Assembly: GCA_951406725.2 (NCBI GenBank)
Contig: OX597834.1
Location: 40,072,001-40,196,000, forward strand
DNA length: 124,000 nucleotides
Source: Octopus vulgaris
Taxonomy: Eukaryota
Direction: 5' to 3'
Shown here: piece after piece, positions 1,007 to 1,191 of the stretch
How positions within the stretch are numbered: position 1 is the stretch's first letter
How the letters are laid out: every line of letters begins with the position of its first letter
Position numbers and translations under genes: made by a program
The notes under the pieces: model-generated
What the model saw: only the letters and a program-made list of their open reading frames with translations
Database searches by the model: none
What the model was told of the DNA's origin: nothing

Positions 1007-1191
1007 GATGGATATTTGTCCTCATCTTATTTGTTGTTAACACAACGTTTCGGCTGATATACCCTCCAGCCTTCATCAGGTGTCTTGGGGAAATTTCAAA
1101 CCTGGGTTCTCATTCCTAGAGGGTACATCAGCCGAAACGTTGTGTTAACAATAAATAAGATGAGAACAAATATCCGTCAAATGTACATAAT
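1007..1191. mobile_element. fold-back Penelope-like repeat remnant (60-bp inverted arms), continuing at 3907-3943 beyond the LINE
   Basis: Arms 1007-1066 and 1119-1178 are reverse complements with few mismatches. Contains a hammerhead motif; the PLE link is inferred from that motif. Confidence 0.6.
1039..1085 (-). ncRNA. minimal type I hammerhead ribozyme motif (probable dimer-type)
   Basis: Minus strand reads AGACAC CUGAUGA A GGCUG gagggUaUaU CAGCC GAAA C GUU GUGUU. Intact core, 5-bp stem II, 5-bp stem I (GACAC/GUGUU) and palindromic helix III AACGUU. Confidence 0.7.

What the first reader, a model, noticed from the sequence alone, without database searches (positions are those of the whole stretch)
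1039..1085. Intact minimal hammerhead ribozyme motif in an intronic fold-back repeat
Seen: the minus strand reads stem I GACAC, core CUGAUGA, an extra A, stem II GGCUG/CAGCC, GAAA, C-GUU, then stem I' GUGUU, and helix III is the palindrome AACGUU. Known: Penelope-like elements carry such minimal hammerheads, which cleave as dimers through a palindromic helix III. Inference: this abundant octopus-type repeat is a PLE or retrozyme remnant. The motif is sense to the inferred host pre-mRNA, while the 60-bp inverted arm (1119-1178) could sequester it as dsRNA, which would act as a built-in off switch.
Basis: partly seen in the sequence, partly recalled or inferred. Interest (0 to 1): 0.8.

Follow-up and report, generated by a model that had tools for sequence, protein, structure and literature searches.

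The report
Penelope-element minimal hammerhead in octopus repeat
The motif is real: it is the known "minimal hammerhead" ribozyme motif carried at the 3' end of a very abundant Penelope-like retrotransposon family. This copy is an ordinary dead insertion, and its fold-back arm is a by-product of how these elements integrate, not a switch.

Summary
On the minus strand, 1084..1039 reads GACAC-CUGAUGA-A-GGCUG(G)...(U)CAGCC-GAAAC-GUU-GUGUU, flanked by a 63-nt, 92% inverted repeat. It meets every feature of the published "min-HHR" of Penelope-like elements (PLEs). Rfam's hammerhead models miss it because helix III has no loop.

The exact 46-mer occurs 848 times in the genome and the surrounding unit at least 4,432 times. 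The unit is the 3' UTR of a PLE: it lies downstream of an RT plus GIY-YIG-like ORF in 10 of 14 loci. About 95% of sampled copies are a short SINE-like form with a discrete 5' end and target-site duplications. About half carry an inverted partial copy, like the window.

Other hammerhead families in this genome, and PLE relatives in other assemblies, keep the core, the bulged A and GAAAC-GUH while helices I and II covary. So the motif is a conserved RNA element, not chance. Dispersed copies decay neutrally.

At this locus the hammerhead has no sense partner and is locked in a -107 kcal/mol hairpin. "PLE remnant" is supported; "retrozyme" and "built-in off switch" are not; the intronic/sense claim is untested. 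It is a new member of a known kind.

The parts
1039..1084 (-). Minimal type-I hammerhead motif (min-HHR): helix I GACAC/GUGUU, core CUGAUGA, unpaired A, helix II GGCUG(G)/(U)CAGCC, then GAAAC-GUU. Predicted cut between 1044 and 1043.
   Evidence: It is identical to the family's commonest 46-mer, which has 848 exact genomic copies.
1045..1048 (-). Self-complementary ACGU (A15.1 C15.2 G16.2 U16.1). This is the only possible helix III, and only between two copies.
   Evidence: Sequence. A palindromic 15.2-16.2 pair is a listed hallmark of PLE min-HHRs (PMC4209133).
1007..1118 (-). Sense copy of the PLE 3'-UTR unit. It is 5'-truncated at TAGGAATGAG and 3'-truncated at ..ATATCCATC, where another SINE-like repeat begins.
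   Evidence: Alignment to other copies.
1119..1191 (-). Inverted partial copy of the same unit, running from the tail to the helix II loop. It forms the left arm of the fold-back and carries only the 3' half of a hammerhead on the plus strand.
   Evidence: 21-22 of 40 unbiased copies have such an adjacent inverted copy.
1007..1069 (.). Right arm of the inverted repeat. It covers the 3' strand of helix II, GAAAC, GUU, the 3' strand of helix I and downstream sequence.
   Evidence: fold.
1116..1178 (.). Left arm of the inverted repeat.

Best explanation
The motif is the minimal hammerhead (min-HHR) in the 3' UTR of an abundant Penelope-like element (PLE) lineage of this octopus-like genome.

Shown computationally. 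The PLE runs: RT plus GIY-YIG-like ORF, stop codon, a 73-nt segment with box A/B-like motifs, an internal (AAT/AAC)n microsatellite, about 140 nt holding the min-HHR, (GTAAATAAT)n, and an optional ~35-nt tail. Most copies are a short form that starts at the box A/B segment. Copies have target-site duplications, and about half carry a snap-back inverted partial copy.

Inferred from the literature on PLE hammerheads. In transcripts holding two sense copies (tandem PLEs), or between two RNAs, the ACGU palindromes pair to form a double hammerhead. This cuts after GUU and trims unit-length RNA for reverse transcription.

The window copy is a 5'- and 3'-truncated insertion next to a LINE tail. Its hammerhead sequence is intact because the copy is young. 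It has no sense partner nearby, and in any transcript spanning both arms it would be buried in a 63-bp hairpin. At this locus it is most likely catalytically silent and without function.
For: [quoted passage not shown]

Family size: 848 exact 46-mers and 4,432 units found by flank anchors.

PLE linkage: the upstream frame reads ..RYVNDTF.. then ..VYSIPCSCGRLYKGET..EHRKA... Homologues carry RVT_1 plus HTH_animal, and one source names them GIY-YIG endonuclease. A 67%-identical relative hits reverse-transcriptase models. The min-HHR lies 600-860 nt downstream of the endonuclease match, on the same strand, in 10 of 14 loci.

Insertion features: 5' ends cluster within about 40 nt in 17-19 of 40 unbiased copies, and only 2 of 40 run into the ORF. 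Target-site duplications are seen at L024, L002, L073 and L074. Adjacent inverted copies occur in about half of copies. The ~35-nt tail matches PLE descriptions (PMC8557442).

Covariation: a second family, GUUU-CUGACGA-A-GAGC/GCUC-GAAAC-GUU-AAAC, has 4,923 matches against 9 in the control. A third family is detected by Rfam. Relatives in other assemblies have helix II GGCCG/CGGCC, GACC/GGUC and GGGGAC/GUCUCC, with the same bulged A and GAAAC-GUH.

N7, the one unconstrained core position, is the most variable non-CpG site (32.5%) and marks a true subfamily.
Against: - No cleavage data exist for this sequence, and published min-HHRs cleave poorly even as dimers.
- Nearest-neighbour energies do not favour the double-hammerhead fold: -22.7 against a dimer MFE of -31.2.
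- Rfam hammerhead models give no hit even at E<=10.
- Dispersed copies show no extra conservation of the core: 3.5% against 3.5% for flanks. This is expected for dead copies.
- 12-15% of copies lack the GUU triplet through a 3-nt deletion. If these propagated, cleavage is dispensable.
- GIY-YIG was recognised only by motif and by source names. Pfam, NCBIfam and PDB searches did not detect it.
Confidence: 0.8

Rival explanations
1. The conserved hammerhead-like fold is mainly a structural tag that the PLE reverse transcriptase/endonuclease recognises at the 3' end of its template. This is how SINEs borrow LINE tails. On this view self-cleavage is vestigial or irrelevant.
For: Published min-HHRs have very low activity. 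The short non-autonomous form shares exactly this 3' region with the PLE. Copies without the GUU triplet make up 12-15% of the family. The double-hammerhead fold is not thermodynamically favoured.
Against: What is conserved across families is exactly the catalytic core, the G10.1-C11.1 pair and an N-U-H site, while the helices change sequence. That pattern points to catalysis rather than to a protein-binding sequence. The deletion copies share no other diagnostic changes, so recurrent slippage in GTTGTGTT explains them as well.
Confidence: 0.2
2. The short form is not a Pol III SINE. It is a PLE copy whose reverse transcription usually stops or jumps at the GC-rich palindrome GCCCATGGGC just after the ORF stop, which gives an apparent discrete 5' end.
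For: ARAGORN and the Rfam tRNA model do not recognise the head. The palindrome sits exactly at the clustered 5' ends. Short inverted duplications are common at that junction.
Against: TGGCGTAGTGG at positions 8-18 matches the box A consensus, and AGTTCGATTCC at 52-62 matches box B in 10 of 11 positions. Spacing is tRNA-like. I saw no TTTT run in the sense strand of the unit as read from copies. These are observations by eye and were not tested statistically.
Confidence: 0.4
3. The motif is a chance hammerhead look-alike that was amplified because it sat in a successful repeat.
For: Copies decay neutrally and Rfam gives no hit.
Against: At least three families in this genome and four relatives in other assemblies keep the same architecture with different helix sequences. 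The motif also shows all the non-descriptor hallmarks listed for PLE min-HHRs.
Confidence: 0.03
4. The fold-back is a selected regulatory device, either an off switch for the ribozyme or a source of dsRNA or small RNA.
For: The hairpin is very stable: -107.1 kcal/mol, about 46 kcal/mol better than any fold that keeps hammerhead helices I and II. It gives a weak miRNA-precursor-like Rfam hit of 32 bits, below the threshold of 53.
Against: Inverted partial copies occur in about half of insertions, with breakpoints anywhere from the tail to the head. This is the documented PLE insertion architecture. The arms of this copy show no conservation beyond what its youth explains.
Confidence: 0.05

Closest known systems
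Minimal hammerheads (min-HHR) in the pseudo-LTRs of metazoan Penelope-like elements. Sources: Cervera & de la Pena 2014, PMC4209133. Lunse, Weinberg & Breaker, RNA Biol 14:1499, is known here only as cited in PMC6765202.
   Same: Type-I topology with no helix III or loop 3. Helix I is 4-5 bp and helix II is longer. There is an unpaired nucleotide between A9 and G10.1, a G10.1-C11.1 pair and a palindromic 15.2-16.2 pair. There are thousands of mostly solitary copies per genome, some in opposite-strand pairs 100-700 bp apart. The motif lies downstream of an RT plus GIY-YIG ORF.
   Different: The host is a cephalopod, and no paper found in four full-text searches of the held library describes this family. 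The cleavage triplet is GUU rather than the commoner GUC. The motif is separated from the ORF by a box A/B-like segment and an internal (AAT)n microsatellite.
Schistosome Sm-alpha / Sj-alpha SINE-like retroposons with hammerheads (Ferbeyre et al. 1998 and Laha et al. 2000, as summarised in PMC6765202)
   Same: A short non-autonomous element with Pol III-type promoter motifs and a hammerhead that needs a second copy to cleave. It is linked to PLEs of the same genome.
   Different: Sm-alpha carries a canonical hammerhead with a short helix III and lies largely in tandem arrays. Here there is no loop 3, the copies are dispersed or inverted, and Pol III transcription is only inferred.
Animal non-LTR retrozymes (PMC7761336; bioRxiv 10.64898/2026.07.22.740005)
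   Same: A type-I hammerhead on a non-coding element that probably derives from PLE pseudo-LTRs.
   Different: Retrozymes are head-to-tail tandem repeats of roughly 170-400 nt, each with a hammerhead, and they give circular RNAs. No tandem sense-sense arrays were seen in 40 unbiased copies.
Canonical type-I hammerhead, Rfam RF00163
   Same: The catalytic core CUGANGA...GAAA and an N-U-H cleavage site. The same genome holds RF00163-scoring copies with GAAAC-GAUC-GUU.
   Different: The window motif has no helix III hairpin and gives no RF00163 hit at E<=10.

Membership tests
Hammerhead ribozyme, PLE min-HHR class | Conserved core C3 U4 G5 A6 N7 G8 A9 ... G12 A13 A14 | tested here: met
   CUGAUGA at 1079-1073 and GAAA at 1051-1048.
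Hammerhead ribozyme, PLE min-HHR class | Cleavage triplet N-U-H followed by helix I of at least 4 bp that pairs with the bases just 5' of C3 | tested here: met
   GUU at 1046-1044. GACAC/GUGUU gives 5 pairs, including one G-U.
Hammerhead ribozyme, PLE min-HHR class | Helix II closed by G10.1-C11.1, with one unpaired nucleotide between A9 and G10.1 | tested here: met
   A1072 is unpaired. GGCUG(G)/(U)CAGCC gives 5-6 bp.
Hammerhead ribozyme, PLE min-HHR class | Palindromic 15.2-16.2 pair, allowing an intermolecular helix III | tested here: met
   A-C-G-U at 1048-1045 is self-complementary.
Hammerhead ribozyme, PLE min-HHR class | Helices covary between related families while the core stays fixed | tested here: met
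   Helix II is GGCUG/CAGCC, GAGC/GCUC, GACCCA/UGGGUC, GGCCG/CGGCC, GACC/GGUC or GGGGAC/GUCUCC. Helix I is GACAC/GUGUU, GUUU/AAAC or UGUAC/GUACA. This is a qualitative comparison, not a statistical test.
Hammerhead ribozyme, PLE min-HHR class | Self-cleavage, as a dimer | not testable with these tools
   Only energies could be computed. The double-hammerhead fold scores -22.7 kcal/mol against a dimer MFE of -31.2.
Canonical type-I hammerhead (Rfam RF00163) | Helix III hairpin and a score above the gathering threshold | tested here: not met
   No hit at the gathering threshold or at E<=10 on 950-1250. The loop 3 length is 0.
Penelope-like element (family level) | [quoted passage not shown] | tested here: inconclusive
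   Reverse transcriptase: the motif RYVNDTF is present, homologues carry RVT_1, and a relative hits group II intron RT models. Endonuclease: VYSIPCSCGRLYKGET..EHRKA was recognised by eye, and one source names homologues GIY-YIG. No profile or PDB hit was obtained. All copies inspected were degenerate. The longest open frame listed was 569 aa.
Penelope-like element (family level) | Hammerhead in the terminal repeat or 3' region, in sense with the ORF | tested here: met
   10 of 14 loci found by the endonuclease protein have the min-HHR 600-860 nt downstream on the same strand.
Penelope-like element (family level) | Complex insertions: an inverted 5'-truncated copy upstream, a 30-40-bp tail extension, and association with microsatellites | tested here: met
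   An adjacent inverted copy in 21-22 of 40 copies. The optional tail GTACATAATTCCTCATCTCTTAAATATAGAACTG in about 13 of 40. An internal (AAT/AAC)n repeat. Compare PMC8557442.
Penelope-like element (this locus) | A PLE ORF adjacent to the motif | tested here: not met
   The neighbouring 885-aa frame at 1261-3918 is an APE-type LINE with Exo_endo_phos_2 and RVT_1. The window copy is only a 185-bp fragment of the PLE 3' UTR.
Animal non-LTR retrozyme | Head-to-tail tandem array of short units, each with a type-I hammerhead | tested here: not met
   There is one sense copy in the window. No sense-sense tandem arrays were found in 40 unbiased copies.
tRNA-type SINE (Sm-alpha-like) | Internal Pol III box A and box B, or tRNA homology | tested here: inconclusive
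   By eye, TGGCGTAGTGG sits at positions 8-18 and AGTTCGATTCC at 52-62. ARAGORN and Rfam tRNA models find nothing.
tRNA-type SINE (Sm-alpha-like) | A discrete 5' end, target-site duplications, and a 3' end shared with an autonomous partner | tested here: met
   5' ends fall at reference positions 1343-1383 in 17-19 of 40 copies. Target-site duplications of 11-13 bp occur at L024, L002, L073 and L074. The 3' end is shared with the PLE.

The most novel reading that the evidence does not exclude
The short form may be a genuine Pol III-transcribed SINE (box A/B head) that a Penelope-like element mobilises through the shared min-HHR-bearing 3' end. That would be a cephalopod counterpart of schistosome Sm-alpha.

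Its PLE-style snap-back insertions would then have seeded thousands of long, near-perfect hairpins across octopus transcription units. Such hairpins could be a substantial source of dsRNA substrates for the unusually active cephalopod A-to-I editing or small-RNA machinery.
Probability: 0.25. Interest if true: 0.5.

Novelty: new member of a known kind. Interest (0 to 1): 0.3.

Why it matters
This adds a well-characterised cephalopod example to the PLE minimal-hammerhead class. The example consists of a young family, probably of order 10^4 copies (my extrapolation from the 4,432 anchored matches), its coding partner, and at least two sister hammerhead families in the same genome.

It also shows concretely why Rfam-based annotation undercounts these ribozymes. 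Only six hits reached E<=0.001 here, among the 73 candidates that the search scored, whereas pattern searches found thousands of min-HHRs.

For annotation, it warns that hairpins at such loci give spurious miRNA-like hits. It has no implication for the host gene unless the hairpins prove to be editing or small-RNA substrates.

Tried and rejected
- Rfam on the whole window at gathering thresholds, and on 950-1250 at E<=10, gave no hammerhead. The only hit was miRNA-like (mir-9223, 32 bits against a threshold of 53) and comes from the fold-back.
- I first read the unit as the 3' end of an antisense LINE or SINE with an (ATT)n tail, because one end is constant and the other is variable. I rejected this. 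Target-site duplications bracket head plus microsatellite plus hammerhead unit as one element in the hammerhead-sense orientation, and the unit follows a PLE ORF in sense.
- I tested whether the LINE-like 3' ends upstream of L020/L021, or the window's own LINE, are the partner. They are short unrelated fragments with no ORFs. The window ORF is an APE-type LINE.
- ARAGORN and Rfam tRNA models on the head were negative.
- Pfam, NCBIfam and PDB searches on the octopus PLE frames gave no domain hit. Classification rests on motifs and on homologues' annotations.
- An apparent "broken-core subfamily" (GAAUC) turned out to be a segmental duplication with identical flanks (L069, L070, L072).
- The external relatives L100 and L102 showed no motif. 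One contig ends 225 nt after the ORF; the other showed no motif within the 800 nt scanned.
- Host-gene orientation could not be established. Nine other long frames in the window have no Pfam hit.

Full report
**1. The observation**

On the minus strand, 1084..1039 reads GACAC CUGAUGA A GGCUG-gaggguauau-CAGCC GAAAC GUU GUGUU.
- In hammerhead numbering this gives a 5-bp helix I (one G-U pair) and the full C3-A9 box.
- One unpaired A lies between A9 and G10.1.
- Helix II is 5-6 bp and is closed by G10.1-C11.1.
- G12-A14, A15.1-C15.2 | G16.2-U16.1 with no loop, and U17 follow. The predicted cut is between 1044 and 1043.
- The combined pattern occurs once in the window and never in 100 shuffles.
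- A stricter descriptor of my own gives 1 hit in 124 kb and none in 20 shuffles.
- The inverted repeat is real: 1007-1069 against 1116-1178, 63 nt, 92% complementary.
Only ACGU can pair between two copies, because A14 and U17 must stay free.

**2. Why Rfam is silent**

No hammerhead family matches at gathering thresholds, or at E<=10 on a 301-nt slice. The same model does find canonical copies elsewhere in this genome: six hits reached E<=0.001 among the 73 candidates scored, and all six are over the cut-off. Three of them read UGUAC-CUGAYGA-long helix II-GAAAC-GAUC-GUU-GUACA. The window motif differs in having no helix III hairpin at all. That is exactly the "min-HHR" that Cervera and de la Pena defined for metazoan Penelope-like elements. 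Their description lists:
- no helix III or loop 3;
- a helix I of 4-5 bp and a longer helix II;
- a conserved G10.1-C11.1 pair;
- a palindromic 15.2-16.2 pair;
- activity only as dimers, and weak in vitro;
- frequent opposite-strand pairs 100-700 bp apart (PMC4209133; see also PMC6765202).

**3. What the repeat is**

The window belongs to a 2.8-Gb genome. A protein homologue is annotated from Octopus sinensis.
- The exact 46-mer occurs 848 times, against 0 for the reversed control.
- A pattern anchored only on sequence flanking the hammerhead finds 4,432 units.
- Forty of these were fetched without regard to the motif. In hammerhead-sense orientation the element runs as follows:
  - a 73-nt head, GGGCATATGGCGTAGTGGTTAAGAGC..GAGTTCGATTCCAGGCAGTGACC;
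  - an (AAT/AAC)n microsatellite;
  - a unit of about 140 nt containing the hammerhead;
  - (GTAAATAAT)n;
  - in about a third of copies, a ~35-nt extension ending ..TTAAATATAGAACTG.
- Target-site duplications of 11-13 bp bracket whole elements at L024, L074, L002 and L073. L002 and L073 are fold-back copies.

**4. Link to a Penelope-like element**

- In L060 and L067 the head is preceded by a shared coding sequence. It translates to ..LPYVK.LS.KIQK.C.PYDIRTVFKS..CVYSIPCSCGRLYK.ET...LKIRVDEHRKAV...
- This is the GIY-YIG core with two internal cysteines that characterises canonical PLE endonucleases (PMC8557442).
- Longer frames add the RT C-terminus (RYVNDTF, FLDVLI..).
- Homologues carry RVT_1 plus HTH_animal, and one source names them GIY-YIG endonuclease. 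A 67%-identical relative hits group II intron RT models.
- Searching the genome with the endonuclease fragment alone gave at least 2,393 candidates. In 10 of the 14 loci returned, the min-HHR lies 600-860 nt downstream on the same strand.
- So the unit is the 3' UTR of this PLE.
- It is not passed at this locus. The neighbouring 885-aa ORF (1261-3918, minus strand) is an unrelated APE-type LINE.
- Profile and PDB searches did not recognise the endonuclease. That domain call therefore rests on motifs and on homologues' annotations.

**5. Short form and fold-backs**

I mapped the 40 copies onto a PLE reference.
- 17-19 copies begin within a 40-nt window at the start of the head.
- Only 2 copies continue into the ORF.
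- 21-22 copies have an inverted partial copy directly upstream, with breakpoints scattered from the tail to the head.

A discrete 5' end suggests a SINE-like non-autonomous element, as do box A (TGGCGTAGTGG, positions 8-18), box B (AGTTCGATTCC, positions 52-62) and the absence of any T4 run I could see in the sense strand. ARAGORN and Rfam do not see a tRNA. A reverse-transcription stop at the GCCCATGGGC palindrome is a live alternative.

The inverted copies match the "inverted 5'-truncated copy" architecture described for PLEs. The window's fold-back is one such case. Its sense part is truncated at TAGGAATGAG (1118). Its inverted part runs from the tail to the helix II loop (1119-1191).

**6. 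Is the hammerhead a conserved RNA element?**

Dispersed copies say nothing either way.
- Non-CpG divergence from the consensus is 3.5% in the core, 3.5% in flanks, 2.8-3.2% in stems and 5.2% in loop 2.
- Only 9 of 40 copies still satisfy the descriptor. Most failures come from decay of the two CpGs at C11.1-G12 and C15.2-G16.2.

Evidence at the level of source genes is positive.
- The single most variable non-CpG site is N7, the one free core position (32.5%). The N7=A copies share a second diagnostic change, so they form a true subfamily.
- A second family, GUUU-CUGACGA-A-GAGC-ucc-GCUC-GAAAC-GUU-AAAC, has 4,923 matches against 9 in the control. Its N7 takes all four bases.
- PLE relatives in other assemblies, at 40-67% protein identity, carry the same architecture about 130-420 nt after the ORF stop. 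Their helix II is GGCCG/CGGCC, GACC/GGUC or GGGGAC/GUCUCC, and one uses GUC.
- Across all of these, the core, the bulged A, G10.1-C11.1 and GAAAC-GUH are constant, while the helices change with compensation.

A caveat: 12-15% of copies carry a 3-nt deletion that removes the GUU triplet. They share no other markers, so recurrent slippage and a propagating variant are both possible.

**7. Mechanism and status of this copy**

Inferred from the literature: two sense copies pair through ACGU to form a double hammerhead, which trims multimeric PLE or short-form transcripts.

Computed:
- Monomer MFE is -13.6 kcal/mol, and this fold pairs core residues. The fold with only helices I and II scores -12.2.
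- The double-hammerhead dimer scores -22.7, against a dimer MFE of -31.2. The active fold is not favoured without tertiary contacts or cofactors. This agrees with the reported low activity in vitro.
- A transcript across the window's fold-back folds at -107.1 kcal/mol, against -60.8 when hammerhead helices I and II are enforced.
- There is no second sense copy in the window.

The copy is therefore sequence-intact but almost certainly inert. The hairpin is an insertion scar, not a designed switch.

**8. Comparison and verdict**

This is a new member of a known kind: PLE min-HHRs, with a possible Sm-alpha-like SINE derivative. It is not a retrozyme array.
- Cephalopod genome papers mention Penelope elements and a few hundred Rfam hammerhead hits (PMC6962438).
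- No paper found in the full-text searches of the held library describes this family.
- Interest is modest.
- The most novel reading still open is a PLE-mobilised Pol III SINE whose snap-back insertions litter octopus transcripts with long dsRNA hairpins.

Noticed in passing
window 1261-3918 (minus strand): An uninterrupted 885-aa frame with Exo_endo_phos_2/Exo_endo_phos and RVT_1 domains. This is an apparently intact APE-type LINE ORF2. Its (ATT)5 tail, at about 1195-1211, abuts the fold-back.
   Followed up: partly
window ~830-1005 (minus strand): Another SINE-like repeat (GGAGTGGCTGTGTGGTAAGTAGCTTGCTTAC..GGTTCTGGGTTC..) directly abuts the right arm and truncates it at ..ATATCCATC. ARAGORN does not call it a tRNA.
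   Followed up: partly
genome-wide, e.g. contig 1 at 822362-822402: A second very abundant min-HHR family, GUUU-CUGACGA-A-GAGC-ucc-GCUC-GAAAC-GUU-AAAC, has 4,923 pattern matches against 9 in the reversed control. N7 takes all four bases, and helix II shows compensatory variants such as GAAC/GUUC and GAUU/GAUC. Its carrier element was not identified.
   Followed up: partly
L032, L033, L036 (1501-1608 in each locus): A third hammerhead family scores above the Rfam RF00163 threshold: UGUAC-CUGAYGA-~75-nt helix II-GAAAC-GAUC-GUU-GUACA. It has the same GUU site and a palindromic loop 3. An inverted partial copy lies upstream in L032.
   Followed up: no
L069, L070, L072 (contig 1 at 21.17, 21.30 and 22.16 Mb): Three copies share the same core-breaking changes (GAAUC, CAGUC) and identical 3' flanking sequence. 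This indicates a local segmental duplication rather than retrotransposition.
   Followed up: partly
contig 2 at 7630882 and 7633842 (both minus); contig 1 at 107417773 and 107422863 (both plus): Same-strand pairs of the exact 46-mer lie 2,960 bp and 5,090 bp apart. These are candidates for PLEs flanked by two hammerhead-bearing repeats.
   Followed up: no
window 950-1250; L049 at 325-494: Fold-back repeats give sub-threshold Rfam hits to unrelated miRNA precursor families (mir-9223, mir-2012, mir-7131). These are hairpin artefacts and could mislead automated ncRNA annotation.
   Followed up: partly
window 5457-6228, 18366-19015, 58341-59014 and others: Several stretches are open in three or more reading frames at once, which is typical of microsatellite or low-complexity sequence. 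They were not examined.
   Followed up: no
L099 at about 3700-3780, downstream of the PLE ORF in another assembly: A related PLE (51% protein identity) also has a box B-like GGTTCAATCC segment between the ORF stop and its hammerhead. This hints that the box A/B-like module is an old part of this PLE lineage's 3' UTR.
   Followed up: no
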